Part shown: positions 24,344 through 63,342 of the stretch, one piece after another
Layout: every line of letters starts with the position of its first letter
Position numbering within the stretch: position 1 is the stretch's first letter
IMG/VR virus record: IMGVR_UViG_3300033182_000980
Coordinates: 311,692 to 375,691 of that record
Strand: one strand, 5' to 3'
DNA: 64,000 bases
Notes under the pieces: model-generated
Told to the model about the DNA's origin: nothing
What the model saw: the letters and a program-made list of their open reading frames with translations, nothing else
Databases searched by the model: none
Translations under genes and position numbers: made by a program

Positions 24344-24611
24344 GTCTGTTCTCCTTTACGAAGTTGGGTGTCGATTACATAGGTTATATGATTAAGGGGT
24401 TACAAGCTCTAAAGCCGACAGTTAGTTGGCAGTCGCTACCACCCTCGATACTAGACTATAGATAAGGGGTTACACTTCCCCACGGTAGAAATGCACGAGT
24501 CAGAGAATACGCAAAGTTTTCGAGGGTTTAGGTGTCTGTAACCCCTTATCTATATCATAGTATCGGGGCTGAATGACTCACCCCACCAACCACTCCCCAA
24601 TGGAGAACATC

Positions 24612-33644: not shown

Positions 33645-34805
33645 TTAGAGGTCGATAGGGCAAACATCAGAGCTGGCTTGGCTTTGAGCGTCTACCACAT
33701 CGGAGCGTAGGTAGGGGTCGATAGCACCCTCAAGAGCGTCTTGATTGTGCTTCTCGTTGAGATGCCCCTTGATGATCGCAAAGGATCGCTTGAGAGCCTT
33801 CTTAAAGTCGGTGATGCCTAAGTCCTCCATGACTGTAAGGCAAGCATGACCCCATTGCTTTGCTTGGCGTAGAGTGATCTCCATACCCATCGCTTGCTCC
33901 TCTGCTACCTTACGGATAGCTCGGTTGCAGTCCACCAAGAGCTTCACTTGGTCTTGATCAAACTGAGGAAACTCAGCCTGTACGACCATACGCTCAAACT
34001 TAGGTGTAGGAGGTGGAGCGTAGATACCGACACAGCGAGACAGGAGGCTTGAGTCTTTCATTTGGGTGATGTTCCCTCGACCACCATCCCCATCTGCACC
34101 ACTATTGCTCGTAAAGTAGAAGCGAGTGTTAGGCAAGATCTCAAACATCTCACCTGTGATTGGGTTGGTCAGCTTCTCTTTGCCTAGCTCAAGAGCTTGG
34201 CGGAGGATCTCAAGCTGGTCGGGTGTAGCTCTGTCGTAGTCAGAGAAGAGGATGACTGCGGGTACTGTGATTGTAAGCATACCCTTGTCATTGACAACAG
34301 TATAGCCGACTTTCTCCATGCCCTTGATTGCGTCTTGAAGCTGTTGCTCGGTTGCCCCTGTAAAGTCTCGCTTGCACGACACCCCACGACAAGCCTTGAG
34401 CAGATCACCCTCGACCTCTTTAGTCATTGTGCCACCTTTGCCATCACCTACGAGCGTGGTTCGGTAGATCCAGTCCACAGGATTTGTGCCTTGCTTAAAG
34501 GCAAAGCGAGCGAGAGGCAGATTGAAAGCGTGGCAAAACGCCTCGATTAAGATGTCCTTACCTGTACCAGCAGGCCCCGACACGATGAGGTGGTTGATTT
34601 TCAAGAAGAGAGTGCCATCTTGCATCCACCCCTCGCTCGTGTCCTCGACATAGTTGTCGGGACGCTTTGCAGGGTCGAAGCCAGCGTTGATGATCTCTAA
34701 CGCTGTGAGTGGCGACATTGTTCTACGCACACCACAGAAGTAGTTGTAGGCGAGGGTATACAGTTCGGGTCGCTGACGATTTTTTTTCATGTTCATATCG
34801 ACCAT
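33645..34805 (-). CDS. MoxR/CobS-like AAA+ protein with atypical Walker motifs
   Basis: GPAGTGKD (Walker A), VILFSDYDR (Walker B position), FYFTSN sensor, LLSR, ITLRQ. Confidence 0.8.
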   Translation of the reverse strand: MVDMNMKKNRQRPELYTLAYNYFCGVRRTMSPLTALEIINAGFDPAKRPDNYVEDTSEGWMQDGTLFLKINHLIVSGPAGTGKDILIEAFCHAFNLPLARFAFKQGTNPVDWIYRTTLVGDGKGGTMTKEVEGDLLKACRGVSCKRDFTGATEQQLQDAIKGMEKVGYTVVNDKGMLTITVPAVILFSDYDRATPDQLEILRQALELGKEKLTNPITGEMFEILPNTRFYFTSNSGADGDGGRGNITQMKDSSLLSRCVGIYAPPPTPKFERMVVQAEFPQFDQDQVKLLVDCNRAIRKVAEEQAMGMEITLRQAKQWGHACLTVMEDLGITDFKKALKRSFAIIKGHLNEKHNQDALEGAIDPYLRSDVVDAQSQASSDVCPIDL

Positions 34806-35066
34806 AAGGGTTCTCCTTGTCGAAGTAGGTTGCGTTGATGTAGTTCACATAAATAAGGGGTTACAGGTTGGGCGAGTCGCCCGATTAGGTTATACAATCT
34901 CGTGAGAAAATGTTCCCTCACACCATGATATAAATAAGGGGTTACAGCTCATCGAAAAAAGTTTTTTGTCCGATAGTGGTCAGCTCGTCCGTTATATGTG
35001 TGAACCGAATTGTAACCCCTTATCTATACCATCACATCAACCACCCACTCCAACAGGAGAACGCTT

Positions 35067-35261
35067 ATCAAATACCAAGTCATACTGAACAACACCCAAG
35101 TCCTCTCAACACATAAAAATCGCAAGCTCGCTGAGAATGCACTCAGACGATGGATGAAGAAGCATGATGAGGAGCGTCAAGCCCACAACCGAATGATCAG
35201 TTGGGTTGACCCAAAGCTCGTTCGCAATGTGAGTGGGGTCTACCACATCCGAGCAGTGTAA
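35067..35261 (+). CDS. 64-aa ORF starting at ATC (non-canonical start or pseudogene)
   Basis: Class I motif at 35012; SD context AGGAGAACGCTT identical to that of ATG-start genes 41128 and 45430; open to TAA. Confidence 0.5.
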   Translation: MKYQVILNNTQVLSTHKNRKLAENALRRWMKKHDEERQAHNRMISWVDPKLVRNVSGVYHIRAV

Positions 35262-36553: not shown

Positions 36554-37366
36554 ATGCCTAATAAGTACGACACACAAGTCTTGTCCTCGATCAATCGGGG
36601 AACAAATAAAGTGAGGCGAGCCTTAGAGGTCGCCAATCAAAAGGTCGGTCAAAACTTTATCGGTGCTCGCTTGAACACTCGAAGCTCGGCTCTCGTGAAT
36701 ACGCTTACTAGCGTTCGCACTGGTCAGATCAATCGTGATCGCTACCATAAGATGTACCAGAAGCCACAAGTGAGAGCGGCGTTCTCGTTCGCTATAGACG
36801 GTAGCGACTCGATGAACTACAACACAGGGTGTCCGAGTGGCACTTACTGGAAAGAGTGTATCAGTCTCATACATGGGCTTCATACAGCTTGCCAAGGGAT
36901 CGGGGTTGACTCAACCTCTGCGTTGGTCATGTACACCTATGGTGATCGTGATGTGCCTATGGCAAGCTCTAGCTATAAGCCTGTGGCTAACATGATCAAA
37001 GGTCTTGGTGATAAATGGCAACGAGATAATCCCGATAAGCTACGCAAGAAGCGTTGCAATGGAGGAACATCAATCATCTGTTATGCCGAGACCGCACTAG
37101 ACATGGTATCTCAATCTGACGCTACCCATAAGATCGCCTTCTTCCTTACCGATGGTGAGGACTATGAAAAGGCTTACCTAGAGAGCATGAGACAGCAAGC
37201 TCAAGCTCAAGGCATCAAGCTAGTAGGGATCGGGCTAGGTGTGAGTGGTGATCGACTCCCTAATGGCATTAGTGGTGCTAATGCTCTTGAGATCGCACCT
37301 CGAATGATGGATCACCTAGAGAAAATCATCAAGTCCTCAACAGGTGTAGAGGCAAACGACAAATAA
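36554..37366 (+). CDS. von Willebrand factor A domain protein (CobT C-terminal-like)
   Basis: MIDAS DGSDS, GGT, FLTDGE, VGIGLG. Confidence 0.85.
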   Translation: MPNKYDTQVLSSINRGTNKVRRALEVANQKVGQNFIGARLNTRSSALVNTLTSVRTGQINRDRYHKMYQKPQVRAAFSFAIDGSDSMNYNTGCPSGTYWKECISLIHGLHTACQGIGVDSTSALVMYTYGDRDVPMASSSYKPVANMIKGLGDKWQRDNPDKLRKKRCNGGTSIICYAETALDMVSQSDATHKIAFFLTDGEDYEKAYLESMRQQAQAQGIKLVGIGLGVSGDRLPNGISGANALEIAPRMMDHLEKIIKSSTGVEANDK

Positions 37367-37775: not shown

Positions 37776-37803
37776 CCGACCTCTGCCCTTAGTGGCATTC
37801 GAT

Positions 37804-37919
37804 AGACGCAGACGCTGGTGTCTCACATCTAGGCTTTGTCCATGAGCTGAACGAACAACACTTTTTGAAGGTAGGTGCTGTTCCCGATGTGATGGGAGGT
37901 TCGACTCCTCTATGTGTCT
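37804..37919 (+). ncRNA. tRNA-like RNA 1 (acceptor, D-like and T arms; expanded anticodon region)
   Basis: AGACGCA/TGTGTCT acceptor stem; GAC-GCTGGT-GTC; GGAGG-TTCGACT-CCTCT T arm. Confidence 0.65.
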
Positions 37920-37945
37920 TTAGGAGATTTAGTCTTGTATCTCCG

Positions 37946-38100
37946 AGCCTTAGACGGTTGGTGTCGCACATACAGGTTTTAGTGTATTGTCCTGTAGCTC
38001 TAATCTGATCGCTGTGGGTGGCGATCTCACTCGTACTTTTGGGAAGGGGTACAGAGTAAAGATTGAGCAGTGTCGGAGGGTTCGACTCCCTCGTAAGGCT
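37946..38100 (+). ncRNA. tRNA-like RNA 2 (paralog of RNA 1)
   Basis: AGCCTTA/TAAGGCT acceptor stem; GAC-GGTTGGT-GTC; GAGGG-TTCGACT-CCCTC T arm. Confidence 0.65.
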
Positions 38101-38212
38101 TTACGATTAGATTTCTAGCCTGTGGGCGAGGGGCTGATCTGTAACCCCTTATTTATAGTCTAGTGTAAGGGTTGATTGACAGCCCACTAACCCACTCCCA
38201 AAGGAGAAACAA

Positions 38213-38290
38213 ATGGTACAGCTCTTTATCTTCCTCCCTGTCCTCTTCCTCGCCTACGCCATGCTCTGTGATTGGGTTGTTGGCGAGTAA
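38213..38290 (+). CDS. 25-aa single-TM peptide (not in the ORF track)
   Basis: MVQLFIFLPVLFLAYAMLCDWVVGE with its own class I motif (38141), hairpin and SD. Confidence 0.6.
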   Translation: MVQLFIFLPVLFLAYAMLCDWVVGE

Positions 38291-38306
38291 AGTAAAGTCG
38301 GGGTTC

Positions 38307-38746
38307 TGTAACCCCTTATCTATTACCTAACATGAGGAACGATCCTCACAACCACTCACTCTCATAGGAGAACAAGACATGATCGACTTAACCAACTACC
38401 CAATGCTCAACGCTCGTCAGCACACCCCCTTCTTCGCAGACCTCACCTCAGAGGATCGTGTGATGAATGTCAACGGTAGCCCCATGTCTCATGGGGTGTG
38501 GAACATGATCGTCAGCCACCGAGATCTCAAGCTGTGGTGTCGGCTCGGAATGAAACCCCATCGTGGGTGGAAGGTGAGCCAGGCGAAGGCTTACTTCGGC
38601 ATCAAGGGCAACAAGGACAAGCTCTTGAAAGAGTTTGAGGCTCTTAAGGCAGAGGTAGACGAGATCCTTTTAGGGCGATAATGATCGGGGTTGTAACCCC
38701 TTATCTATAACCTAACATGAGGAACGATCCTCACAACCACTCACTC
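38307..38746 (+). repeat. 55-bp direct repeat (38307-38361 and 38692-38746) flanking one gene
   Basis: One mismatch; each copy contains the class I motif and a TGAGGA/TCCTCA hairpin. Confidence 0.9.
38379..38681 (+). CDS. Hypothetical protein
   Basis: G.KPHRGWKVS..K.YFG.KG phage ORF pattern; SD. Confidence 0.8.
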   Translation: MIDLTNYPMLNARQHTPFFADLTSEDRVMNVNGSPMSHGVWNMIVSHRDLKLWCRLGMKPHRGWKVSQAKAYFGIKGNKDKLLKEFEALKAEVDEILLGR

Positions 38747-38760
38747 CCAAAGGAGACAAC

Positions 38761-39285
38761 ATGAACAGCGTAAACATCACAGCCGAAAACTTTATCCCAG
38801 CTCTCCTCGCACCCTTCGGTGGCAAGGACACCCACAACGAGGCAGGCGAGGCTCTCCCCTCAACCAGCTCTAAGGCTTGGAGCTTCACCCTCCACAATCG
38901 TGATCGCAACACTCACCTCACCTTCAAGGCTCGCCGCCCGAAGGGGTGGACTGTAGAGTCTCCTGTCCTCATCGACCTCATGACAGGCAAGGACAACGAT
39001 GCAGACTTTGGCTTCATCGGGAGCGTCAGTCCTCGTGGGTTCTACAAGCCAAGCCCCAAGAGCAAGGTAGACGCTGATCGCCTTGAGGTAGCCAATCGCA
39101 CAATGGTTTGGCTTCTCACCAAGCTCAACAATGGGGTGGAGCTTCCCGATGCCCTAGAGATCAAGGGTGCTTCTAAGTGCTGTAGGTGTGCTAAGAAGCT
39201 CACCAACCCCGACAGCGTAGACGATGGGATGGGTCCAGTCTGTCGCCGTAAGGCTAACGAGAGCAAGGTTAGCCGAGGGGTCTAA
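38761..39285 (+). CDS. DUF6011-like zinc-ribbon protein (paralog of 48477)
   Basis: HLTFKA; CCRCAKKLTNPDSV..GMGPVC. Confidence 0.8.
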   Translation: MNSVNITAENFIPALLAPFGGKDTHNEAGEALPSTSSKAWSFTLHNRDRNTHLTFKARRPKGWTVESPVLIDLMTGKDNDADFGFIGSVSPRGFYKPSPKSKVDADRLEVANRTMVWLLTKLNNGVELPDALEIKGASKCCRCAKKLTNPDSVDDGMGPVCRRKANESKVSRGV

Positions 39286-39416
39286 GGGTTGGGCTAGGGT
39301 CGGGGCTGAAAAGCTCTTAGAGGGGCATTTAAGAGATCGTAAGAAAAGTTTGTAGGTTTTGTCCGATAGTGGTCAGAGCCTTCGTCTTATAGGTGAACAG
39401 CAAAGGAGAACAAGAC

Positions 39417-39725
39417 ATGAGACATGATAACCTAACTCTCCCCAACAACCGAAAGGGAAGCACGATGAAGATGAGAGCAAGACGAGGCGACCTTATCACC
39501 CTCCAACCTGATGCCTGTGGCTACTTCGAGTCCGAGGTCGGCTGTACGGTAACGCTCATGAGTGAGGATCTCGGTAATCGTACGGTGCGTGTCATCAAGG
39601 CTCGTGATCAGTTCCACCACGACTGGCCCGAAGCTCCAAATAACCTCATGCTCGTAAGGTGTGAGGGTCAACAGTACCTTGTGTCTCGTGAGCATCGCCA
39701 CCTCTGCTTGGTGTCGGGGAGCTGA
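39417..39725 (+). CDS. Hypothetical protein
   Basis: SD AAAGGAGA; start uncertain. Confidence 0.55.
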   Translation: MRHDNLTLPNNRKGSTMKMRARRGDLITLQPDACGYFESEVGCTVTLMSEDLGNRTVRVIKARDQFHHDWPEAPNNLMLVRCEGQQYLVSREHRHLCLVSGS

Positions 39726-39858
39726 TCGGGGTTGGACCCTAGAAATCATGGGTCGGTCATATCCAGCTCTAGTGCCAGAGCTGTAACCCCTTATCTATGA
39801 TCTAGTATCAAGGGTTGACTGGTTCAGCCCAACAGACTCCAGAAAGGGAGAACAAGAC

Positions 39859-41947: not shown

Positions 41948-42541
41948 ATGACTTATCTAATAAGGAGTTATCGGGGTTTTGACTCGTTCTTAAAGTGGCA
42001 GTTATGGGTCGGGTTTCTGGCTAGTCTGGTGTGGGCTTTGAGTGTGCCGATAGTCCATAAGCTCCAGGGTGTGCATTGGACGACAGCGTATATCTCACTC
42101 TACCTAATCTTCATCCGAGTGAGTGGGTTGATCCTGCCCTTCTTCAAAGGAGCGAGGATTAGAAATCTGTACCTCATCACGATCTGCTTGAATGTGATCT
42201 ATGCAGCCAGCCTGTTGCTTTACTTCTATGATGTCCATCTCTTCCTCTGGGCAGAGGTGGTTCTAGGCATAGCGTATAGCGTGGTTGGTCCACTCATGGG
42301 GATCGGGTGGGATGTGTGGGTCGTGAAGCAGTACCCAACGGACACCTTCGAGGACTTCAGATATTGGGAGTCCTTTAGGTGTTCGCTAGGTGGTGTGATG
42401 GGGAGTGGCTTAGTCGCCTTGATGACAACCCTCACGAGTCTCGATCAGACCGTGAGGGTGTTCATGGGGGCGATGGTGTTCATGCTAATGATCCAGCAAG
42501 CAAACTGGATCAAGCACTACCGACATCTCATCGAGCCTTAG
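41948..42541 (+). CDS. Polytopic membrane protein (about six TM, half-MFS-like)
   Basis: Six hydrophobic segments. Confidence 0.7.
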   Translation: MTYLIRSYRGFDSFLKWQLWVGFLASLVWALSVPIVHKLQGVHWTTAYISLYLIFIRVSGLILPFFKGARIRNLYLITICLNVIYAASLLLYFYDVHLFLWAEVVLGIAYSVVGPLMGIGWDVWVVKQYPTDTFEDFRYWESFRCSLGGVMGSGLVALMTTLTSLDQTVRVFMGAMVFMLMIQQANWIKHYRHLIEP

Positions 42542-43020
42542 CGACCCTTACGCTTTTGTCGGCTAAGGATCTGATTCATGCTCACTACCCCGTCATCGTC
42601 AGAGGGTAAAAGCTCGGTGATCTTGTCTCCCTCAATGAGAGCCTGATACCCCTCGAAGTCAGAGATGACAAACCCCTCTGGAGTCTTGACCCAAGACACC
42701 TTGGCGATCTCATCGAGTCCGTCATAGTGGAGGGTCAGCTCGCCTGTGTCGGTCGGCTTGAAGATGATCTCAACGCACCACTGGGGATCGAGTCCGTTGT
42801 CATCGTCCATGTACTCTTGAGTGACCTTGTACTCGCCGCCTACGACCCTTGCGTAGTAGGTGAGCTTCAAGTCAGAGAAGCTGGAGACAGACCAGGTGGG
42901 GTTGCCCTTTTCGGGAGTGTTAAAGAAGGTCATTGCTGAGGGGTCAAGATCATCAGTAGGGTAGGGTGGGTCATGGTTTACCGTAGCGTAGGAAAAGTCC
43001 TCATACGAGCGTTGAGACAT
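42538..43020 (-). CDS. Hypothetical protein
   Basis: Operon with 43024. Confidence 0.65.
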   Translation of the reverse strand: MSQRSYEDFSYATVNHDPPYPTDDLDPSAMTFFNTPEKGNPTWSVSSFSDLKLTYYARVVGGEYKVTQEYMDDDNGLDPQWCVEIIFKPTDTGELTLHYDGLDEIAKVSWVKTPEGFVISDFEGYQALIEGDKITELLPSDDDGVVSMNQILSRQKRKGR

Positions 43021-44875: not shown

Positions 44876-45088
44876 CTACTTGCCTTTCTTGTCTTGCATC
44901 CACTGGGTGAAGTCGATGACCTCTTGCTTTGGGGCGTACAGCTCTTGGAGGAGCTTCGCCTTGATCGTGTCGATGTCAGACTCGCTGACCTCCCACACTC
45001 GATCCCCATGAGAGGTTGGCTGGCCAGTCTTGATCGAGTGGGCCATCTCCTTCACGAAGTTGTTGATGTCTTCATTGGTCATACGCAT
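44876..45088 (-). CDS. Hypothetical protein
   Basis: Class I motif at 45155 with hairpin. Confidence 0.65.
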   Translation of the reverse strand: MRMTNEDINNFVKEMAHSIKTGQPTSHGDRVWEVSESDIDTIKAKLLQELYAPKQEVIDFTQWMQDKKGK

Positions 45089-45166
45089 AAGCGTTTATCC
45101 TTTGTCAAAGAGTGGTTGCGTGGGTGGTCGCTACCACCCACGCTAGTTCATAGATAAGGGGTTACA

Positions 45167-45430
45167 TTAGTCTCGAACGATGCGTCCTAGTCGGTTCACC
45201 TTGATAACGAAGGTATCACCATGACGGTAAGCGTCATCACCTTTTCCGATGATGGCAGACTGTACAAGAAGGACATAGCGATGACCTTTTACAAGGTGGT
45301 CAAACATATCTTTCCAAGGCAGTCTTGGTTGTGAGGATGAGGCTGATGTCAGACGAACACGCTTCACATCATAGGACACTTGAGCTTTAGCCCAAGCAAA
45401 CACATCAGCTTTACTCGGCATAGAAGCCAT
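45167..45430 (-). CDS. Hypothetical protein
   Basis: SD; class I motif at 45503. Confidence 0.7.
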   Translation of the reverse strand: MASMPSKADVFAWAKAQVSYDVKRVRLTSASSSQPRLPWKDMFDHLVKGHRYVLLVQSAIIGKGDDAYRHGDTFVIKVNRLGRIVRD

Positions 45431-45497
45431 AAGCGTTCTCCTTTACGAAGTAGTGGTTTTCAAAGAAATAATCGTTGGTCGCTACCAACACTAGTCC

Positions 45498-45537
45498 ATA
45501 GATAAGGGGTTACAGGCTGTCGTAACCCCTTATCTAT
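45498..45537. promoter_or_regulatory. Back-to-back class I motifs forming a perfect 16-8-16 palindrome
   Basis: ATAGATAAGGGGTTAC-AGGCTGTC-GTAACCCCTTATCTAT between divergent genes. Confidence 0.85.
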
Positions 45538-45604
45538 CTCTTAGTATCGAGGGTGGCAGAGGTCGCCCCACCAACCAAACTCTTTGACACTATGAAAGGA
45601 GGCT

Positions 45605-45886
45605 ATGCTTATGCGTATGCCTACTAAGTCCGACTACCTAGCCTACGCTGGCTACTCACGCTCTTACCAGGTTGAGGTCTGTGCTTGCGAGTACGACTCA
45701 AAGGGTATGATCCTCGACTTCGCCACAGACGGATGGGAAGGGCGGCAGCTTCGCAATGTGCCAACTGACACACCCCTTCAGCTCAACATCATGGATCGCA
45801 ATGGCGACAAGATGGAGGACATCGGGATCAGCATCAATGGTGAGACTGGTGAGATCGAGTGCAGTAGCAAGCACTTCGAGGGCTAG
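45605..45886 (+). CDS. Hypothetical protein
   Basis: SD AAAGGAGG; class I motif at 45522. Confidence 0.7.
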   Translation: MLMRMPTKSDYLAYAGYSRSYQVEVCACEYDSKGMILDFATDGWEGRQLRNVPTDTPLQLNIMDRNGDKMEDIGISINGETGEIECSSKHFEG

Positions 45887-46121: not shown

Positions 46122-46733
46122 ATGACACTTACCCAAAAAGTAAATGGGGTTCGGAAGATGATCCCGACCCCTCATCACAAGACAGCGTATAAGACCAATG
46201 CGTCCGAGCAGTCTTGGCTTGCCCGACATCGTGATCTGTTCATCCAGCTTGCCGAGGAGGTGGGCTTCGAGGTGGGGGTGGGGAGTCGAGAGCTTCGGCT
46301 GACGCACGACATCGGAAACTTCACCGTCCGATTCCATTGGGATCGGGAGTGGTCAACAATCGAGATGTACGGTCGCTGTGTTGATCGAACCACCCGAACC
46401 TACCACCACTGGCGAGGTGATGCTAAACCCAAATCGCACAATGACGCACACCTTGGAAACTGGTTTCTCAAGAATGTGCGAGAGGACTGGATCGGGTCCA
46501 ATATGCCACCGATGGAACAGATCGGTCCGAGGGACGAGATCGTGTTTACCTCCACTCCGACAGGTGGGGGTCAAAGAACACGAGCAAAGGTCATCGAGCG
46601 AGGGGGCAAGTGGGGCAACAACTACTTCAAGGTCGAACTGCTAGAGGAGCGAGGGGTGAAGAAGATCAAGCCCATCGGTACGGTGGTGGAGGTACACTAT
46701 AACTGCATCATCCACCACGAGAGCAAAGCGTAA
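46122..46733 (+). CDS. Hypothetical protein
   Basis: SD; stop codon inside a class I motif. Confidence 0.75.
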   Translation: MTLTQKVNGVRKMIPTPHHKTAYKTNASEQSWLARHRDLFIQLAEEVGFEVGVGSRELRLTHDIGNFTVRFHWDREWSTIEMYGRCVDRTTRTYHHWRGDAKPKSHNDAHLGNWFLKNVREDWIGSNMPPMEQIGPRDEIVFTSTPTGGGQRTRAKVIERGGKWGNNYFKVELLEERGVKKIKPIGTVVEVHYNCIIHHESKA

Positions 46734-46783
46734 CCCCTTATCTATAGAACAGCATACAGCACCTCTCTTGAAAGGAGAACAGC

Positions 46784-50707: not shown

Positions 50708-50861
50708 GGTTAAGTCTCCAGAGGGGGGGTCTTATATATGAGCATTTTTGGAAAAGCGATGTTGGATAAGTGATCTCATATATTATTTGGCGGGGGATTT
50801 TTTGGGTTCGATTTTGTAACCCCTTATCTATGTAATCTTGCCTCTTGAAAGGAGACTTAGA

Positions 50862-54302: not shown

Positions 54303-54725
54303 ATGAGAAGATCAGCATCAGAAGTAATTAGAAATCTTGAGATGAGGATCGCTCGTCTTGAAAGGCAGTCTTCAAGTACGGACGACTACATACTTGCAAA
54401 GAAAATTGAGCGTCAGTTGGACGAAAACGGTCTTACCTTAAAAGACCTCGAAAGAAACCCTAAGCTCCTTGACCTTGATGAGATTGAGCATCAAAATCCT
54501 AGCATGAAATCTGACATACAAAGATGGGTCAAGAAGGGTTGGATCACCATTGAGGGTGGTGAATATGAGGAGTCTCGTGGAAGCCGATCATATCCTGGAG
54601 GTTGGGATGCGTACCTCATCACCAAAAAAGGTATTCAAGAGATTAGGACTTGGAACACCCTACAACAGATGGGTCGGCTTCACCACCACATCCAGATGGG
54701 AGTGATTAGGCCTCTGACCACCTAA
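54303..54725 (+). CDS. MRRSASE-leader protein 3 (C-terminal region possibly winged-helix)
   Basis: MRRSASEVIRNLEMRIARLERQS; WVKKGWI...YLITKKG. Confidence 0.85.
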   Translation: MRRSASEVIRNLEMRIARLERQSSSTDDYILAKKIERQLDENGLTLKDLERNPKLLDLDEIEHQNPSMKSDIQRWVKKGWITIEGGEYEESRGSRSYPGGWDAYLITKKGIQEIRTWNTLQQMGRLHHHIQMGVIRPLTT

Positions 54726-55435: not shown

Positions 55436-56434
55436 ATGAGACATGATAACAGTTATCGTAGAGCAAAACGCTCTTATCGTGAGGCTTCAATGAGCCGACA
55501 GGCAACAATGGAGCGTATTGCAGGGCTTGAGATGAAGGTCGCGGCGATGGAATACCAAGCAGGGATGAAAGAGTCTCTTAAGGGGCTATTCCTCAAGTAT
55601 GTTGCCGAGCCTCTTGATAAGTATCGCAGACATCTTAATCTTTTTAAGATGCCCATTGATGATCTAATGGATGATGTAATCGAGGCGATTGCTCCAGAGT
55701 ATGCCGAGAAGCTCATGGAGGCTGAGGTTGACGCTGACTTCACCGAGTTTGAAGAGGGTGCTAAACTCCGACAAGATGAGAGAGCACATGGTCAGTCCAA
55801 ATTCCCCCCTCGTAATAAGTCTCCAGAGTTCTATGAGGGTTATCATTGGGGCGATGTTAATGATGGCCCTGTTCCGAATGAGGTTAAGAAGCGTATCATC
55901 CAGGAAGCCGCTCAAGAGCACAGCAAGAAGGTTACCGAGAGAGCTTTGAAAAAGGTTCTTAATGTAATCAACCCTGTTGAGATCATCAAACACGCTTACC
56001 ACATCATCAAGAAGCATGGATGGGATCCTCATACTGAGGAGATTTGGTATAAGAAATGGCCTAAGCGTCTGTTCAAGGTTGTTCTCATGGGTATTGCTGT
56101 AGCTATCGTTGAGACAATCGAACACGCTGTACTACCTGCCATTATGGTTAAGCTCACGGGCAACCCAGCTTGGTATGGACTTGCCGCTGTACCTCTCCTT
56201 GAGATTGTTCTTCCTATCGTCCTCGCTTACTTCAAGGGAGCTAAGAAAGACACTGTTGATGAGCCAGGACACCTTGATTGGTATGAAGAGAACTATGGAG
56301 AAATCGAGGATGTCCTTGACGATAATGTCTTTGACGATGATGACGATGATGATAGCCGAGTAGCGAGCTATCGTCCTCGTGGTCGCAGAGCGAGTTATCT
56401 TGATCCTGCTCTCAAGTTTAACTACAACCTTTAA
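55436..56434 (+). CDS. Late-type membrane protein with leader-like RIAGLEMKVAAME segment
   Basis: TAGTTTATTTAT at 55373; hydrophobic C-terminal helices; several R/K-x-A motifs. Confidence 0.7.
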   Translation: MRHDNSYRRAKRSYREASMSRQATMERIAGLEMKVAAMEYQAGMKESLKGLFLKYVAEPLDKYRRHLNLFKMPIDDLMDDVIEAIAPEYAEKLMEAEVDADFTEFEEGAKLRQDERAHGQSKFPPRNKSPEFYEGYHWGDVNDGPVPNEVKKRIIQEAAQEHSKKVTERALKKVLNVINPVEIIKHAYHIIKKHGWDPHTEEIWYKKWPKRLFKVVLMGIAVAIVETIEHAVLPAIMVKLTGNPAWYGLAAVPLLEIVLPIVLAYFKGAKKDTVDEPGHLDWYEENYGEIEDVLDDNVFDDDDDDDSRVASYRPRGRRASYLDPALKFNYNL

Positions 56435-56862
56435 GGTAGTACGCAGAGTCCTCGACTCACATTGTGGATGACAGGGAAGCATTTCCCTCCAGCCACAATG
56501 ACCGTACCCAACATAGATGGGTCTTTAGGGTGAACCACATTATCGGTGGTAATCACCTCATCTATACCTAGCTCATTCAATCGGTGTTCTGCATCGGTGA
56601 ATGAGCTTTGTTTTATGCCCCATTGCTCTTTTTCACTACGAGCTAGGGCATACCCTACCATAGCCTCTATAACTTCGTTTACAGAGGCTTCTATGCCCCA
56701 TGTGAGTACCGACTCTCTATTAGAGGGTTGCTCTACCCATTTGAGTAGGTCATCTCCCTTTGGAGCACCTACGAGTAAAGGCATACATTTAGGGGGAACA
56801 TCTACTTCGAGGAACAATGGTGTCTTGCCCTTTACTTTTAGTTCTAAGATTTCAATCATCAT
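56431..56862 (-). CDS. Hypothetical protein
   Basis: HNVSRG.C motif; operon context; start moved to 56862. Confidence 0.65.
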   Translation of the reverse strand: MMIEILELKVKGKTPLFLEVDVPPKCMPLLVGAPKGDDLLKWVEQPSNRESVLTWGIEASVNEVIEAMVGYALARSEKEQWGIKQSSFTDAEHRLNELGIDEVITTDNVVHPKDPSMLGTVIVAGGKCFPVIHNVSRGLCVLP

Positions 56863-57253
56863 TGTCCTCGTTTTGGTCTGTACTATCGGCAAGAACCCAT
56901 AAGAGAGCGGCCACATCTGGATATTTACTAGCTATCTTACCCATGTCGCCCTCATTGATGAGATCATCAAACTCAAGATTGAACTCGTCTCTGATTTCTT
57001 CCTCTGTTTTTTGGGGCTTGAAGAAAGGACAGGTGTTTGGTGTGGATGGGTCACAGATCACACCATCCCACTCTTTAGGTTTCTCTGCATCTTGGAGGCA
57101 AACATAAAACAAAGGGTCATTAGCATTGCCTCGGACTAAACCGGAGTGAGAACAGTTGCAAGGCTTCTTCGACATACCATTGCGAATAGCCTTTTGAAGA
57201 AGCCGATGTTTGACTTGCTTGAGCTTATGTCTGATTGCACCTTGTTTCTTCAT
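56852..57253 (-). CDS. Cys-rich hypothetical protein
   Basis: PCNCSH..VC..IC..TCPFF. Confidence 0.7.
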   Translation of the reverse strand: MKKQGAIRHKLKQVKHRLLQKAIRNGMSKKPCNCSHSGLVRGNANDPLFYVCLQDAEKPKEWDGVICDPSTPNTCPFFKPQKTEEEIRDEFNLEFDDLINEGDMGKIASKYPDVAALLWVLADSTDQNEDNDD

Positions 57254-57873
57254 TACTTTATTCTCTTTAAGGTAGCACCATTCTTACTTGGTGTGATCTT
57301 GTATCCTATATCACAGTTATCAGCAATGGTCGGATCATGTGTAATACACAAAATGTCCATATCTAAGCGTTGACAGAGAACCTTGAGAAAATCGACTAGA
57401 ATCTCTACTCGGTTTTCGTCCACAGCAGGGAATGTCTCATCAAGAATGAGGACAGGTCTTAGGTTTCTCTTAAGGATTAAAGAAATCCTTAACAAGAGGC
57501 TCTGTATCGTGGTGACAGCTCCACCAAAAGCGTCTAAGCCATCTCCCTCAATCTCAAGCCCATCTTGACCTTTAAAGGTGGTTTTGAGATTGACTGCTAC
57601 CTTACCACGAACCTTTGTGATCTCGGCTGTCAGCCCAACCTCTTGTTCGGGGAAGATCGCCTTCAACCCCTCTTCTAAGAGGGAGATATAGGTCGATACC
57701 CCTCGCTCTACTTCATCTTGAGCGAGAGTGTCGAGGATGACCCCTGCTTCTGTCTTTTTATCTTTATCTAGCTCAAGGAAAGCGATCTCGTTTTCGAGGT
57801 CGTCTATGCGTTTTTCACACGATTCCTTGAGCGTTTTTAATCGGTAAAATCGAGAAGCAAGGTCATTCATCAC
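57253..57873 (-). CDS. sbcC: SbcC/Rad50-like ABC ATPase, C-terminal half only
   Basis: Coiled coil, FGG signature, LILDE Walker B, ITH H-loop; no Walker A. Confidence 0.75.
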   Translation of the reverse strand: MMNDLASRFYRLKTLKESCEKRIDDLENEIAFLELDKDKKTEAGVILDTLAQDEVERGVSTYISLLEEGLKAIFPEQEVGLTAEITKVRGKVAVNLKTTFKGQDGLEIEGDGLDAFGGAVTTIQSLLLRISLILKRNLRPVLILDETFPAVDENRVEILVDFLKVLCQRLDMDILCITHDPTIADNCDIGYKITPSKNGATLKRIK

Positions 57874-57874
57874 A

Positions 57875-59080
57875 TTAAAGCATCCAACCTATAATAGAAA
57901 CAGTCTGTACTCCAGAGTCTTGATCGGACTTAAAGAGCATATAACCCTTGTTGCCCTCACGAGTACACCCAAAGACGATGTTATCATTATAGATTTCTAC
58001 TGCCTTTTTGATCGACAAATAGTTAAAATCGAAAGTGGCGATGTCGTCACCCTCACCAGCCTCTTTGAGCCGAGTCGCATACATCAAGTTGGAGAGGTCT
58101 GTGATCTCTTCGAGTGGCTTCTCTGCATCCTCGAATGGGGGCACTTCGAGATTGTATGAGATCGTCTTACTGTTAGACGAGTTCATCTCAAGGCTAGGAG
58201 GCAATAAAGCCTCATCTTCGGGGTCTTTGAATGTGACTTTATAGTTGGTCTTATCAGCAAACGCTGACAAGAATGTAAGCCCATTCATAAAGTTATCCTT
58301 AGACAGCCTCCAAACCCTACGAGGCGTCCAGTTAAACGCATCAGCATATTGCTGTGTGATGGGAGGGTAGGTGTAAGGCAGATCCATTACAGCGAATAAC
58401 GCACCGTCCTCTGCCTTAAAGAATGTCGCTTGACCACCACTAAGGACTTCAATCACATTACCGTCATATGCTTTGAGGAACTTCATCAGTGGTGCGATGT
58501 CCTTGTAGTGGATCTTTACATCCATCCCTTGAAGGTCATCGTGTCGGGACATATTAAGCATATATCCGTCACAGGCAATCGCTTTACCACCCTCGATCAA
58601 GATCATTGCAAGCTCTGGTCTACGGCTATCATCTTGTGATACATACTGTCGGTTTGTATTAAGCGTATCATAGAGGATAGAAGCAGAAATCTCTCCGACC
58701 TTAGTCGCTTGTTTGAACTTCTCGACCCAAGGAGGGAATGCTTCGGGATCTAATGAGACTGTGGTTGCCTCACCCTCACTGCCCTTTAAGGATACTTCCT
58801 TCTCCTCATCGTTGTACTCAATCTCAACGACACCTGTCATAACATTAGTCGCTGAGATTAAACGCTTACCCTCGATAGAAAAAGACCCTTTATCTTGAAC
58901 TGTAGCACCGATGACAGGGATCTTTGAAAACTGACGAGGGGGAGAACAAGCCATGACGCTCACACCAGCTTCTTCGGCAGAGAAGATAAAGTGTGAGGTG
59001 ATGTCTTGATTTGTACCCAAAGTGTTCTGAGCGATTGATAGGGTTTCTTTCAAGTCTTGTGCTGAGACTGTAATCTTCAT
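57875..59080 (-). CDS. dnaN: DNA polymerase III beta-like sliding clamp
   Basis: MKITV...L, F.....FP, VSQDDSRRPEL..I...G...IACDG, YP motifs of beta clamps; 401 aa. Confidence 0.7.
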   Translation of the reverse strand: MKITVSAQDLKETLSIAQNTLGTNQDITSHFIFSAEEAGVSVMACSPPRQFSKIPVIGATVQDKGSFSIEGKRLISATNVMTGVVEIEYNDEEKEVSLKGSEGEATTVSLDPEAFPPWVEKFKQATKVGEISASILYDTLNTNRQYVSQDDSRRPELAMILIEGGKAIACDGYMLNMSRHDDLQGMDVKIHYKDIAPLMKFLKAYDGNVIEVLSGGQATFFKAEDGALFAVMDLPYTYPPITQQYADAFNWTPRRVWRLSKDNFMNGLTFLSAFADKTNYKVTFKDPEDEALLPPSLEMNSSNSKTISYNLEVPPFEDAEKPLEEITDLSNLMYATRLKEAGEGDDIATFDFNYLSIKKAVEIYNDNIVFGCTREGNKGYMLFKSDQDSGVQTVSIIGWML

Positions 59081-59340
59081 AGAGAATCTACTCGACTTTC
59101 AATGCGTGTGATGACTTGCTCTGCATCCAACAGAGCTTCGTTAAGTTTGGTGATTGCCTCTTGCCTTTCAGCTTTGAGGCGATTGATTTCATCTTCAAGA
59201 GTGTCGGGGTTAATACCCCTTTCGACCAATCTTTTATCAAGCTCCGAGAGACTTGATCTGGCTGCTTCTAGCTTACCAAGCAAACGCTCTCGCCTTCGCT
59301 CAATGTCTAGTTTTTTATTTACGAGTTGTTCAAGATCCAT
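59077..59340 (-). CDS. Small coiled-coil protein
   Basis: Heptad repeats around GINP; SD. Confidence 0.7.
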   Translation of the reverse strand: MDLEQLVNKKLDIERRRERLLGKLEAARSSLSELDKRLVERGINPDTLEDEINRLKAERQEAITKLNEALLDAEQVITRIESRVDSL

Positions 59341-59383
59341 TTGAACTTTCCTTTCGTAGTGTGGTTATCAACCATTATATGAT

Positions 59384-60358
59384 TTACTTCATATTGAGGT
59401 TGATAATCCCCCCACCTTGTTCAGTCGGGTCTGGTGTCTTTGTTTTACCTAGACCACGCTTCGCCGCATTACGCTTCTTTTGTGCTTGTCGTTCTTCACA
59501 GATGTTCTCGAACTTACACCAAGTACAGTGCTTAGGGATTGGGTTAGGCTCAAACACCCCCCTGTGGATAGCACGATTAGTTTCAATCGCCTCTTTCCCT
59601 AGCCTACGAATATCGTCATCTGTGATCTTCACTTCAACAAATCCAGTCCACTCATCATCTGGATTTGCAAAGTGCTTCTCTGGAGGGTTTGATCGAGGAT
59701 ACCTAAAGTAAAAGAACCCAAGCCGATCTGGTACTTTCCCATATTGTAATCTAAAACAAAGGGCATACCACCGAAGCTGATCTTCGTCCTCATATTTCAT
59801 TGGAGTAGATGCGTTCTTACCATCAAGGATATGAACCTTGCCCTCCTTGTCTCGATATACAAGGTCAGCAATACCACATACATTAAAGTATTTGTTCATA
59901 GGTGGGGTCATACGCAACTCGGACTTCGCATACGGCCCAAGAAATCTATGCTCTTTTAAAATCTCAAGAAAGTTTTGAGCACCTTTATGACAGATGTCCA
60001 TTGCTTCTTCTCTAGTCATATATGACCAGATCACATAGTGGCGTTGCTCTGCTTTGGCAAACGCTTGATCAACGATCTCCTTGATCTTTGTCTGTATCGT
60101 CTTAGGATCACGATACAACTCATGGTCGTATATTTCCTCAACCACAGTAGATAATACAGTACCCATTAACTGATGATGCTCGGAGTCTTTTGACTCATCA
60201 GGCAATGGCTTTGGCTTTCCTTTACCAGCCCCTAAATCATGGTCGGGGTGTCCTTTATGCCATAGGTATTGTTGAGGGCAAGCCCTCATCATTTTCAAGT
60301 GAGACCAGTATATGTTTCTCATGGGATCGTCCAATACTTCGGTGTTAGGTTCACCCAT
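59384..60358 (-). CDS. PD-(D/E)XK RecB/AddB/Cas4-like exonuclease with a likely Fe-S cluster
   Basis: ACPQQY; GIADLV...ILDGK; QLRWYAL; CTWC...C. Confidence 0.85.
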   Translation of the reverse strand: MGEPNTEVLDDPMRNIYWSHLKMMRACPQQYLWHKGHPDHDLGAGKGKPKPLPDESKDSEHHQLMGTVLSTVVEEIYDHELYRDPKTIQTKIKEIVDQAFAKAEQRHYVIWSYMTREEAMDICHKGAQNFLEILKEHRFLGPYAKSELRMTPPMNKYFNVCGIADLVYRDKEGKVHILDGKNASTPMKYEDEDQLRWYALCFRLQYGKVPDRLGFFYFRYPRSNPPEKHFANPDDEWTGFVEVKITDDDIRRLGKEAIETNRAIHRGVFEPNPIPKHCTWCKFENICEERQAQKKRNAAKRGLGKTKTPDPTEQGGGIINLNMK

Positions 60359-60459
60359 ATTGTACCTCCTATCTAGTTAAAGTTGACGACCCTCTTCCTT
60401 ATATGTTTGTAATCCCTTTATGACCCCTAGATTATGTAGCAAACGCATTTGGGGGTCTT

Positions 60460-61344: not shown

Positions 61345-61346
61345 TC

Positions 61347-62573
61347 TTAGTTGAAGAGATCGTCTAGCTCGTCCATAGCCGCTTGAGCATCACCACCGAG
61401 CTTGCTTGATGGCTCTGTCTTGATCTCTGGTTCATCTTCCTTCTTCTTGGAAGTAAGATAACCACGCACTTGACCAAACATAACATCAAGCCAGTTAGCA
61501 GGGAGAAGGTTTCGGAAGCCCTCAAGACCTTGACCCTTATGTTCTGTGCCTGTGGTTGGGTCAGCCCAAGTGTACCAAGCACCACCCTTCTTCACGACAC
61601 CGACAGAAATCGCAAGGTCAAGCACAGTACGCTCATTGTCTACACCAACCCCATTCATAAGGTAGAACTCGGATTCATGTTTATAAGCGTCTGACACCTT
61701 ACACTTATCGAGGGTAGCACGAACGATGTTGCCCTTGACGGTATCAATCATCTTGTTCTGTAGACCGTCCCACTCCTTACCTCGATCCTTACCAACCACA
61801 CGAAGCATGATCTTGAGGCTTGAGTAGTAAGTCCATGCTTGACCACCTTGAGGCTTACGAGTCGGACCACCACCAAAGCCACCCATACCACCGATAGCTT
61901 CACGAAGCTGAGAAATCCCGATAACCGCAGTGTTCGAGTCAGCGATTACACGCTTAAAGAGAGGAAGGAACTGCGACCATTGTCGGGCGAGAAGTCCGAC
62001 AGCAGATTGCTCACCAGCTTCCTTTTGGAACATCTTTTCGGGAACACCAGCACCCACAGAGTCAACCACGATAAGGTCAACACCTGCCGATGCGAACTTG
62101 ACCATGAGCTTGAACCCTTGCTCAAGGGTTTCGGGCTGTAGGAGCATAAATTTAGATTTGTCTGTAACAGGCACACCGAGCATTTGAGCATAACGAGGTT
62201 CGACCTCATTCTCCCAGTCAATGTAGACACAAGTTCCACCTTCCTCATTACAAATCGAGGCGGCTGTCTGGAGAGCGATAGTGGTCTTACCTGCACCTGC
62301 AAGCCCATAGATATTGGTGATGCGTCCACGAGGTATGCCAGGACAGGGGCGTACACCTTGAGCGTTCTCTTTACCCCCGATGAGATAGTCGAGAGAAACA
62401 GAACCTGTGCTGATATGAGGCATGGAGGTAGACAGAGAATCGAGATCAAGCTCTACAAGAGCCGAGTCTTTCTGACCCTTTTCAGCTTCGTTGAGGACAC
62501 CAGCGAGATCGACACCTTTTAGGGCCGACTTTACCTTTGAAGATTTTGACTTTGATGTTTTGGCTTTAGCCAT
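61347..62573 (-). CDS. recA: RecA recombinase
   Basis: ISTGS..LD, GIPRGRIT, GLAGAGKTT, IVVDSV, ISQLR, GG.A..YY, K.GAWY; start moved to MAKAK after SD. Confidence 0.95.
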   Translation of the reverse strand: MAKAKTSKSKSSKVKSALKGVDLAGVLNEAEKGQKDSALVELDLDSLSTSMPHISTGSVSLDYLIGGKENAQGVRPCPGIPRGRITNIYGLAGAGKTTIALQTAASICNEEGGTCVYIDWENEVEPRYAQMLGVPVTDKSKFMLLQPETLEQGFKLMVKFASAGVDLIVVDSVGAGVPEKMFQKEAGEQSAVGLLARQWSQFLPLFKRVIADSNTAVIGISQLREAIGGMGGFGGGPTRKPQGGQAWTYYSSLKIMLRVVGKDRGKEWDGLQNKMIDTVKGNIVRATLDKCKVSDAYKHESEFYLMNGVGVDNERTVLDLAISVGVVKKGGAWYTWADPTTGTEHKGQGLEGFRNLLPANWLDVMFGQVRGYLTSKKKEDEPEIKTEPSSKLGGDAQAAMDELDDLFN

Positions 62574-62684
62574 GAACGCACTCCTTAAGAATGAGGTTAA
62601 TGGGACGACTTCAAGACCCTTATATGATCTTCTCATTTATAGTCTATTTATAATTTTATTTTCTATGTAAGAGGAGAGACAAAC

Positions 62685-63017
62685 ATGATTTACAACACTT
62701 TAGCACACATTGGAGATACTGTTCCGTGTCAAGTCGCTTGGCTAGGAACAGACCTTAAACCTCTTGATGTTCAGAATGTTGAGGCGACTCTCTTTCACTA
62801 TGTAGGGGATGTACGCACTGTATTAAGTGGACCAAACGCAATGGTAGCCACGGATCAAGCTCATCGCTTCGTGTATCGCTTTACCGTACCAGATAGCGTT
62901 TTAGGACAAACTATATTTGTTGAGTTTAAAGCAGAGTTAGTAGCAGACAACACGCTCATCTATGGCGAACAAACTATCTCAGTCTCTTCAAGAGACACTT
63001 TCATTGAGGTGGTGTAA
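62685..63017 (+). CDS. Ig-like beta protein, putative virion component
   Basis: Beta-strand pattern; late-type motif at 62640. Confidence 0.6.
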   Translation: MIYNTLAHIGDTVPCQVAWLGTDLKPLDVQNVEATLFHYVGDVRTVLSGPNAMVATDQAHRFVYRFTVPDSVLGQTIFVEFKAELVADNTLIYGEQTISVSSRDTFIEVV

Positions 63018-63019
63018 TC

Positions 63020-63340: not shown

Positions 63341-63342
63341 CT

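What the first reader, a model, noticed from the sequence alone, without database searches (positions are those of the whole stretch)
38307..38746. Cassette-like junctions: the motif supplies stop codons, and a 55-bp repeat brackets a single gene
Seen: gene 38379..38681 is flanked by 55-bp direct repeats with one mismatch. In at least five genes (23039, 24044, 31666, 35067, 46122) the TAA stop is the TAA of the next GTAAC motif, so the coding sequence ends exactly at the motif. Two motifs in tandem have no gene between them (24393/24463; 34854/34935). Known: integron cassette stops often fall in the RYYYAAC core, but no attC-type palindrome is visible here. Inference: genes are gained and lost by recombination at the motif (RecA is encoded nearby), and the tandem motifs are empty sites.
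Basis: partly seen in the sequence, partly recalled or inferred. Interest (0 to 1): 0.6.

Follow-up and report, generated by a model that had tools for sequence, protein, structure and literature searches.

The report
Phage promoter repeats bounding shuffled genes
The repeated GTAAC motif is the core of a phage-specific promoter in an uncultured 376-kb marine phage; the small genes behind its copies have been swapped, inverted, gained and lost among relatives, much as already described for T4-type phages.

Summary

**What the motif is.**
- The core GTAACCCCTTATCTATA occurs 33 times in the window and about 67 times in the 375,691-bp phage genome.
- In 64-66 of 71 hits it points at a co-oriented gene start 39-130 nt downstream.
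- It sits back-to-back between divergent genes.
- It is about 100% conserved at orthologous sites where the flanks are about 50% alike.
- It is one of three upstream motif classes, so I read it as a promoter core. Many copies are followed by a leader hairpin, a CA-rich spacer and a strong ribosome-binding site.

**Stops in the motif.** The motif carries a stop in each of its three frames (consensus) and genes are tightly packed.

**The 55-bp repeat.** This is two neighbouring promoter-leaders, 96% alike against a genome mean of 31%. It is a unique, recent duplication or conversion.

**Relatives.**
- An 80%-identical relative has the bracketed gene and its neighbour in swapped order.
- It has two genes inside one "empty" tandem site, a gene inverted between inverted motif copies, and several motif-flanked indels.
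- Synteny breaks are no commoner at motif junctions than at other gene junctions (15/25 against 15/30, p=0.59).

**Ruled out.** No integrase and no attC, so this is not an integron.

**Closest known.** PeSL cassettes of T4-type phages.

**Not tested.** Transcription and circles, because no RNA runs or raw reads were available.

The parts
38307..38361 (+). Copy 1 of the 55-nt repeat. It holds the promoter core (38308-38324), the leader hairpin (about 38333-38348) and a CA-rich spacer upstream of the bracketed gene.
38300..38315 (+). Terminator-like hairpin GGGGTT-loop-AACCCC. Its 3' arm is the motif itself and a T-rich tail follows.
38379..38681 (+). The bracketed gene (100 aa). It has no Pfam or PHROG family. 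It is 93% identical in G001 and 36-53% identical in about 19 unrelated viral contigs. It is absent from the third lineage.
38692..38746 (+). Copy 2 of the 55-nt repeat. It is the promoter core (38693-38709) plus leader of the DUF6011 gene, and is preceded by a second motif-armed hairpin at 38687-38700.
38761..39285 (+). DUF6011 gene (174 aa). In G001 it lies upstream of the bracketed gene, so the order is swapped. Its 3' flank of about 60-75 nt travels with it. Its identities are discordant: 81% to G001 and 86% to the more distant lineage.
38141..38157 (+). Promoter core ahead of a 25-aa ORF (38213-38290, stop included). By its upstream flank it is orthologous to the G001 promoter that drives DUF6011 there.
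24387..24473 (-). Tandem promoter cores (24457-24473 and 24387-24403) with no gene between them. G001 has two genes (88 and 125 aa) at this place.
34848..34945 (-). Second tandem pair of cores (34929-34945 and 34848-34864). It is also tandem in G001 (94826/94906).
45497..45538 (.). Back-to-back divergent cores, 45497-45513 (-) and 45522-45538 (+), 8 nt apart. They are the only promoter candidates for the divergent genes 45167-45430(-) and 45605-45886(+).
44876..45430 (-). Two genes with their own cores (at 45165 and 45513). They lie between direct motif copies (44820 and 45513) and are absent from G001.
45605..45886 (+). Gene that is inverted in G001 together with its promoter and leader. In G001 its 3' end abuts a motif, which then supplies the stop.
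50816..50832 (+). Single core in the window. G001 has a 200-aa gene between two cores at this place.
61347..62636 (-). RecA-family recombinase (429 aa).

Best explanation
**Setting.** The window is the last 64 kb of a 375,691-bp uncultured marine jumbo phage.

**The motif (inferred role).**
- GTAACCCCTTATCTATA is the invariant core of a phage-specific promoter. It is one of three upstream motif classes in this genome.
- In many copies the core is followed by a weaker block, a GC-rich hairpin that would sit at the 5' end of the transcript, a CA-rich spacer and a strong AAGGAGA ribosome-binding site.
- In a fifth to a third of copies an upstream GGGG(T/C) run pairs with the motif's ACCCC. This gives a terminator-like hairpin for the preceding gene.
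- Each small gene in the 23-51 kb region is therefore a self-contained promoter-leader-ORF module. The region is dense in such modules and rich in genes without known family.

**Which polymerase (open).**
- No phage RNA polymerase was recognisable.
- My best guess is host polymerase redirected by a phage factor.
- A 188-aa protein with sigma-70 region 4 is one candidate.

**Stops in the motif (shown directly).** Genes are packed against the next promoter, and the consensus motif holds a stop in each of its three frames.

**The 55-nt repeat (shown).** It is a recent duplication or gene conversion of one promoter-leader onto its neighbour.

**Shuffling (shown by comparison).** Whole modules have been swapped, inverted, deleted, inserted and allelically replaced among three related lineages.

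**Mechanism of shuffling (inferred).**
- The roughly 17-60 nt of shared promoter-leader sequence gives homology for recombination, using phage RecA or copy-choice, as proposed for PeSLs of T4-type phages.
- Selection also keeps only rearrangements that preserve intact promoter-gene units.
- The data do not show that the motif is a preferred breakpoint over other gene borders.
For: **Promoter.**
- 64-66 of 71 hits have a co-oriented start 39-130 nt downstream.
- The logo shows 16-18 invariant positions and no conservation upstream.
- Cores stand back-to-back between divergent genes.
- The region has fewer sigma-70-type sites than shuffles, 8 against 12.5, and none serves these genes.
- Orthologous cores are 90-100% conserved against 38-56% for the flanks.
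- The exact 16-mer is found in 79 stretches from 36 IMG/VR contigs, but the 11-mer core is absent from the nearest GenBank phage.
- Two other upstream motif classes behave the same way.
- Leader hairpins: mean energy -6.7 against -4.3 in shuffles, p 1e-8.

**The repeat.** Leader identity is 96% against a mean of 31% (sd 9) over 2211 pairs. The next best pair is 64%. No such pair exists in the relatives.

**Shuffling.**
- Synteny maps.
- Junction sequences.
- A third lineage with the same modules in another order and orientation, lacking the bracketed gene.
- Discordant identities for single modules.
- Metagenome contigs whose homology ends at gene ends and motif starts.
- RecA.
- A sigma region 4 protein.
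Against: - There is no transcript evidence. No RNA run holds the sequence and only assembled contigs were available, so the transcription start is inferred.
- No polymerase or factor is tied to the motif. T7-type, Rpb1, Rpb2 and sigma region 2 families gave nothing, and the T7-family search had no positive control.
- Synteny breaks are not enriched at motif junctions: p=0.59 in the region. For G000-only blocks genome-wide, P is 0.38-0.45.
- Several breakpoints lie in the leader or at gene ends without a motif.
- My gene calls are crude (ORF plus Shine-Dalgarno scoring), so the junction statistics are noisy.
Confidence: 0.75

Rival explanations
1. The motif is itself the recombination site. Homologous exchange between motif copies excises and inserts genes through mini-circles, and tandem motifs are emptied sites.
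For: - The gene is bracketed by 55-nt repeats.
- G001 holds two genes inside the window's tandem pair 24403/24473.
- Deletion, insertion and inversion events are flanked by direct or inverted motif copies, with homology ending at the edge of the core.
- G001-only blocks are enriched for motif flanks (4 with both flanks, 4 with one, of 18; P 0.003-0.006).
- RecA is encoded.
- There is a precedent in PeSLs (PMC2839356).
Against: - There is no enrichment at motif junctions within the region (15/25 against 15/30), nor for G000-only blocks.
- A core-by-core exchange should leave one motif, yet 24403/24473 keeps two. Its left break is 56 nt into the leader.
- The tandem pair 34864/34945 is conserved in G001.
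- Integration of a circle by exchange in the core would not by itself make two identical 55-nt leaders.
- Selection for intact promoter-gene units predicts the same pattern.
- No circle or deletion junction was observable.
Confidence: 0.3
2. The motif is an integron-like site, with cassettes moved by a site-specific recombinase.
For: Stops overlap a conserved ..AAC-containing core. The array holds small genes of unknown function.
Against: - The only tyrosine-recombinase-fold hit is a type IB topoisomerase, about 62 kb away across the genome ends.
- There is no attC-type imperfect palindrome.
- Modules lie on both strands and each has its own promoter-like core, which always points at its gene.
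Confidence: 0.02
3. The motif acts on RNA, as a terminator or processing site between genes, and not as a promoter.
For: - In 13-21 of 67 copies an upstream G-run pairs with the motif's ACCCC and a T-rich tail follows. Both copies that flank the bracketed gene are among them.
- Terminator-like sites are twice the shuffled expectation.
Against: - Most copies lack the upstream arm.
- Copies stand at the head of divergent gene pairs, where nothing upstream could be terminated or processed.
- No other promoter candidates exist for these genes.
Confidence: 0.07
4. The two 55-nt leaders are alike because both genes need the same regulatory leader (convergent or conserved function). No recent recombination is involved.
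For: - Hairpin types recur among unlinked leaders and between genomes. For example, the GAGGAACGATCCTC type is also found at G000 279764 and at G001 99822.
Against: - 96% identity over 45 nt, including unpaired spacer positions, against at most 64% for every other pair.
- In G001 and in the third lineage the same two genes carry different leaders.
- Orthologous leaders are only about 53-56% alike.
Confidence: 0.08

Closest known systems
PeSLs (promoter-early stem-loops) of T4-type phages (Arbiol et al. 2010, PMC2839356; Comeau et al. 2014, PMC4122927)
   Same: - Short repeated intergenic promoter-plus-stem-loop motifs.
- They are concentrated in hyperplastic regions rich in genes without known family.
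- The upstream gene's stop lies at or in the motif, and a Shine-Dalgarno site and start follow.
- Insertions, deletions and replacements between close relatives are flanked by the motif.
- A gene flanked by two copies in one phage corresponds to a single copy in the other.
   Different: - The promoter here is not sigma-70-like. It is a contiguous 17-nt phage-specific core with no -35 element.
- The stem-loop is either a leader hairpin downstream of the core or a hairpin that uses the core as one arm, and only some copies have either.
- The phage is an uncultured marine jumbo phage of 376 kb with no nucleotide match in GenBank phage records; its closest RecA there is 51% identical, in an uncultured 485-kb phage.
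- Mini-circles and promoter or terminator activity were shown experimentally for PeSLs and are untested here.
- Enrichment of breakpoints at the motif is not statistically supported here.
Promoters of single-subunit phage RNA polymerases (T7, T3, SP6 type; recalled from general knowledge)
   Same: A contiguous, nearly invariant core of about 17 nt ending in CTATA, followed by G or A. Many copies per genome. A 5' leader hairpin and a strong ribosome-binding site follow.
   Different: No T7-family polymerase was detected in the genome (without a positive control). A variant of the motif carries the host-type TCATATAA element in place of TCTATAG. That points to a sigma-dependent -10-like element.
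T4 middle promoters (MotA box plus -10 element; recalled from general knowledge)
   Same: A phage-specific upstream box replaces the -35 element next to a TATA-type -10. It is one class in a temporal series of promoter classes.
   Different: The box here lies directly against the -10-like element, at about -25 to -18 rather than -30. No MotA or AsiA homologue was looked for or found.
Integron gene cassettes
   Same: An array of small genes whose stops overlap a conserved junction core.
   Different: No integrase and no attC. Each gene has its own promoter, and genes lie on both strands.

Membership tests
Integron cassette array | IntI-type tyrosine recombinase next to the array | tested here: not met
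   PF00589 gives one weak hit in the genome (G000 61715-63145). Pfam reads it as a type IB topoisomerase (E 1.3e-12) and no NCBIfam integron-integrase model matches it.
Integron cassette array | attC sites: imperfect palindromes of about 57-141 nt ending each cassette | tested here: not met
   The repeat search finds only direct repeats at the junctions. The only local inverted repeat is a 5-6 bp hairpin.
Integron cassette array | Promoterless cassettes, co-oriented behind one promoter | tested here: not met
   Modules lie on both strands and each has a core pointing at its gene.
PeSL-type regulatory cassettes | Repeated intergenic motif that holds a promoter just upstream of a Shine-Dalgarno site and start codon | tested here: met
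   64-66 of 71 hits are co-oriented with a start 39-130 nt downstream. Function is inferred from position, not assayed.
PeSL-type regulatory cassettes | The promoter matches the host sigma-70 consensus (early promoter) | tested here: not met
   No -35 conservation. The sigma-70 scan finds fewer sites than shuffles and none at the motifs, apart from one partial overlap.
PeSL-type regulatory cassettes | Stem-loop acting as terminator or attenuator within the motif | tested here: inconclusive
   An upstream arm pairs with the core in 13-21 of 67 copies. A leader hairpin of -8 kcal/mol or stronger is present in 26 of 67. Activity was not assayed.
PeSL-type regulatory cassettes | Concentrated in hyperplastic regions rich in genes without known family | tested here: met
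   30 of 67 copies lie in the last 55 kb of the genome. Most genes there have no Pfam or PHROG family. The region is rearranged among three lineages.
PeSL-type regulatory cassettes | Indels and replacements between close relatives are flanked by the motif | tested here: inconclusive
   About 8 clear events are motif-flanked. There is no enrichment over other junctions in the region (p=0.59), and 32 of 47 genome-wide blocks have no motif on either flank.
PeSL-type regulatory cassettes | Mini-circles formed by exchange between neighbouring copies | not testable with these tools
   Only assembled contigs of low-share runs were available. The joints reported have sides of 20-33 nt, which is about the motif's own length and below or barely at the tool's own 30-nt reliability bar.
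T7-type single-subunit RNA polymerase promoter | The phage encodes a T7-family RNA polymerase | tested here: not met
   PF00940 has no candidate in six frames. The control genomes do not carry the family, so the sensitivity of this search is unverified.
T7-type single-subunit RNA polymerase promoter | Contiguous, nearly invariant core of about 17-23 nt upstream of the start site | tested here: met
   Logo of 67 copies.

The most novel reading that the evidence does not exclude
**Reading.**
- The 17-nt core is read by a so far unrecognised transcription specificity system of an uncultured marine jumbo-phage clade. This could be a new sigma-like or appropriator factor, or a polymerase hidden in one of the giant ORFs that have no known family.
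- The same core doubles as a RecA-dependent exchange site that moves promoter-gene modules through small circles.
- That would extend the PeSL mechanism beyond T4-type phages and beyond sigma-70 promoters.

**Status.**
- My evidence excludes neither half.
- The first half rests on the absence of recognisable polymerases.
- The second rests on individually suggestive junctions without statistical enrichment.
Probability: 0.2. Interest if true: 0.55.

Novelty: new variant of a known kind. Interest (0 to 1): 0.38.

Why it matters
- **Annotation.** The result gives a ready map of about 67 transcription units, and of two further promoter-like classes, for a large uncultured marine phage in which most genes have no known family. 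It also gives a concrete motif with which to look for the factor that reads it.
- **Genome plasticity.** The hyperplastic region of this phage family is built from self-contained promoter-gene modules that are reordered among lineages. This is the pattern described for T4-type phages, now seen in an unrelated jumbo phage with a different promoter type.
- **Caution.** Breakpoints at a motif that occupies two fifths of all gene junctions are not by themselves evidence that the motif causes the recombination.

Tried and rejected
- **Integron reading.** Rejected: no IntI (the hit is topoisomerase IB), no attC, and both strands are used.
- **Phage RNA polymerase.**
  - T7 family, Rpb1 and Rpb2 domains and sigma region 2 gave nothing.
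  - Eleven giant ORFs (1084-3049 aa) had no polymerase-related Pfam family; four matched only tail, baseplate or intein families.
  - The 3049-aa ORF had no PHROG family.
  - Three of the giant ORFs had no PDB sequence match.
  - No NADFDGD-type catalytic motif was found.
- **Rfam.** Nothing in 20-52 kb at E up to 0.1. ARAGORN found no tRNA in the window.
- **GenBank phages.** No nucleotide match.
- **Literature.** No paper holds the 12-mer.
- **Reads.** No RNA run and no raw reads. The best holders have at most 9% of the words. Most of the "joints" from laid contigs have a short side of 20-33 nt, about the length of the motif, so I do not count them as deletion or circle evidence.
- **Breakpoint enrichment.**
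  - In-region Fisher test p=0.59.
  - G000-only blocks P=0.38-0.45; G001-only blocks P=0.003-0.006.
  - The genome-wide signal is confounded, because the plastic region is also the motif-rich region.
- **Tandem motifs as emptied sites.** Accepted for 24403/24473 and not shown for 34864/34945.

Full report
**What the sequence is**

- The window is bases 311692-375691 of a 375,691-bp IMG/VR virus record that CheckV rates as complete.
- It has a sheath, a baseplate protein and many giant ORFs without any known family.
- It has no nucleotide match among GenBank phage records.
- By RecA its nearest record is an uncultured 485-kb phage at 51% identity.
- Runs that hold parts of the stretch are mostly marine, seawater or estuary metagenomes.

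**Checking the observation**

- The two 55-nt repeats (38307-38361 and 38692-38746) differ by one base. They extend to 65 nt at 95% and bracket ORF 38379-38681.
- The 12-mer GTAACCCCTTAT, with up to two mismatches, occurs 36 times in the window against 3.8 +/- 2.1 in shuffles.
One of these is a 30-aa ORF that is 93% conserved in a relative. Another is a frame (35067-35261) that has ATC where its relative has ATG.
- The tandem pairs are real, and a RecA-family gene lies at 61347-62636.

**What the motif is**

Position and orientation:
- Oriented copies share an invariant core, (Y)(T)GTAACCCCTTATCTAT(A). Nothing upstream of it is conserved.
- Downstream comes a weaker block. Many copies then have a GC-rich hairpin (mean -6.7 kcal/mol against -4.3 in shuffles, p 1e-8), a CA-rich spacer and AAGGAGA plus ATG.
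- Of 71 genome hits, 64-66 have a co-oriented gene start 39-130 nt downstream. The few exceptions lie inside genes.
- Copies stand back-to-back, 8 nt apart, between divergent genes at 45513/45522. Nothing upstream there could be terminated or processed.

Conservation and distribution:
- The region has fewer sigma-70-type sites than shuffled sequence, and none that serves these genes.
- At 25 orthologous sites in a relative of about 80% identity, the first 11 core bases are essentially invariant and the 17-nt core is 90% identical. Flanks are 38-56% identical.
- The exact 16-mer occurs in 79 stretches from 36 IMG/VR contigs. The 11-mer core is absent from the nearest GenBank phage.

Other motif classes:
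- Two more upstream motif classes exist and behave the same way. One is TCATATAA, a -10-like element that also stands before tRNA genes with TTGAC-type -35 boxes. The other is TAGTTTNTTTAT, found mainly before genes outside this region.
- A minority variant of the finding's motif carries TCATATAA in place of TCTATAG.

From all this I read the motif as the core of one temporal class of phage promoter.

Which polymerase reads it is open:
- No T7-type or multisubunit polymerase and no sigma region 2 was detected.
- A 188-aa protein passes the Pfam threshold for sigma-70 region 4.

**Stops in the motif**

- The consensus reads as a stop in each of its three frames: TAA at +1, TAG at +15 and TAG at +20.
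- Genes are packed against the next promoter.
- The TAA of GTAAC is the commonest stop offset: 9 of 48 co-oriented upstream frames here and 7 of 31 in the relative. Other stops scatter over the 60 nt before the core.
- In about a fifth to a third of copies an upstream G-run pairs with the motif's ACCCC and a T-rich tail follows. Both copies flanking the bracketed gene are of this kind, so the unit can also look like a terminator for the gene before it.

**The 55-nt repeat**

- Across 2211 pairs of copies, leaders (+17 to +61) are 31% +/- 9% identical. This pair is 96% identical and the next best is 64%.
- No comparable pair exists in the relatives.
- In the relative G001 and in a third lineage the same two genes carry different leaders.
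- The repeat is therefore a recent duplication or conversion of one promoter-leader onto its neighbour. It is not the ordinary similarity between promoters.
- An abundant metagenome contig at 93% identity spans 38306-39728 in the same gene order, so the arrangement is not an assembly artefact.

**Relatives**

G001 (226,698 bp, about 80% identical) is syntenic with the window from 10374 to 64000. Gene-level maps show these differences:
- The bracketed gene and the DUF6011 gene are in swapped order.
- Two G001-only genes lie between the equivalents of the window's tandem cores 24403/24473.
- Window genes 44876-45430, which lie between direct cores, are absent from G001.
- Gene 45605-45886 is inverted with its promoter and leader, between cores in inverted orientation. 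In G001 its 3' end abuts a core that then supplies the stop.
- G001 has an inverted paralogue with its own core at 41072.
- G001 has a 200-aa gene between two cores where the window has the single core at 50816.
- The window has extra genes after core 48136.

Further evidence of shuffling:
- A third lineage (four contigs) has the same modules in yet another order and orientation, and lacks the bracketed gene.
- Single modules have discordant identities among the three lineages, which indicates allelic replacement.
- Junction sequences show that promoter and leader usually travel with the gene, and that homology often ends at the 5' edge of the core. Some breaks lie within the leader or at gene ends without any motif.

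**Is the motif the breakpoint?**

- In the window's 20.6-52.3 kb, 15 of 25 motif-bearing junctions and 15 of 30 motif-less junctions are synteny breaks (Fisher p=0.59).
- Genome-wide, of 47 presence/absence blocks, 6 have the motif on both flanks, 9 on one and 32 on neither. Enrichment is significant only for G001-only blocks, and it is confounded because the plastic region is also the motif-rich region.
- The second tandem pair is tandem in G001 too.
Individual events fit exchange between motif copies, but the motif is not shown to be preferred over other gene borders. Selection for intact promoter-gene units predicts the same picture.
- Circles and deletion junctions could not be examined. 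No RNA runs or raw reads were available, and most contig joints have short sides of about the motif's own length.

**Comparison with what is known**

- It is not an integron. The only tyrosine-recombinase-fold hit is a type IB topoisomerase. There is no attC, both strands are used, and each module has its own promoter.
- The closest described system is the PeSL of T4-type phages (PMC2839356, PMC4122927). PeSLs are repeated promoter-plus-stem-loop cassettes in hyperplastic regions, flanking indels between close relatives, with mini-circles shown experimentally.
- Here the promoter is a contiguous phage-specific 17-mer rather than a sigma-70 promoter, the phage is an unrelated marine jumbo phage, and no experiment exists.
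- No paper in the library holds the motif string.

**Verdict**

- This is a new variant of a known kind, of moderate interest.

Noticed in passing
window 37776-38140: A 365-nt non-coding spacer holds two pieces that look like tRNA T-arms (GGTTCGACTCC type, near 37895-37911 and 38093-38110). The second is conserved upstream of the orthologous G001 promoter. ARAGORN and Rfam call nothing here.
   Followed up: partly
window 35067-35261 (+): A 64-codon frame behind core 35012 has ATC where sister leaders have ATG, and where its G001 homologue (55 aa, 53% identical) has ATG. It may have an unusual start or be a freshly silenced gene. Both copies end in the TAA of the next core.
   Followed up: partly
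whole genome (G000), e.g. window 2-5 kb, 45 kb, 55-63 kb: Two further upstream motif classes: TCATATAA (55 copies, -10-like, also before tRNA genes near G000 176-178 kb) and TAGTTTNTTTAT (48 copies, nearly absent from 325-375 kb). Together with the finding's motif they suggest a three-class transcription programme.
   Followed up: partly
G000 42275-42841 (-), outside the window: A 188-aa protein with a sigma-70 region 4 match over the Pfam threshold and a second similar helix-turn-helix. It lies just upstream of a 2234-aa ORF and is a candidate promoter-specificity factor.
   Followed up: partly
about 18 genes across G000, e.g. window 6245-6694 and 54303-54725: A gene family sharing a conserved N-terminal 25-35 residues and a common leader (…TAACCCTTAACC…ATGGAGA) behind the TAGTTT-class motif. 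It may be a targeting or propeptide signal.
   Followed up: no
G000 ends (1-1401 and window 56432-64000): The first and last parts of the record map to overlapping G001 coordinates (121945-123327 and 114783-122354). This suggests a terminal repeat of about 400 bp or a circular permutation, although IMG/VR classes the record as linear without end repeats.
   Followed up: no
G000 3255-7340 (-), outside the window: A 1361-aa ORF contains an intein with a LAGLIDADG homing endonuclease domain.
   Followed up: no
window 33645-34805 (-) and 36554-37366 (+): An AAA_5 (CobS-like) gene and a VWA (CobT-like) gene, 95% conserved in G001, sit in the middle of the plastic region. Each is behind its own core.
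   Followed up: no
window leaders, e.g. 50816-50860, 46730-46783: The ribosome-binding site is often preceded by its partial complement (CTCTTGAAAGGAGA), which could sequester it in a small hairpin.
   Followed up: no
G000 61715-63145 (+), outside the window: A type IB topoisomerase-like gene (Pfam Topoisom_I, E 1.3e-12).
   Followed up: partly
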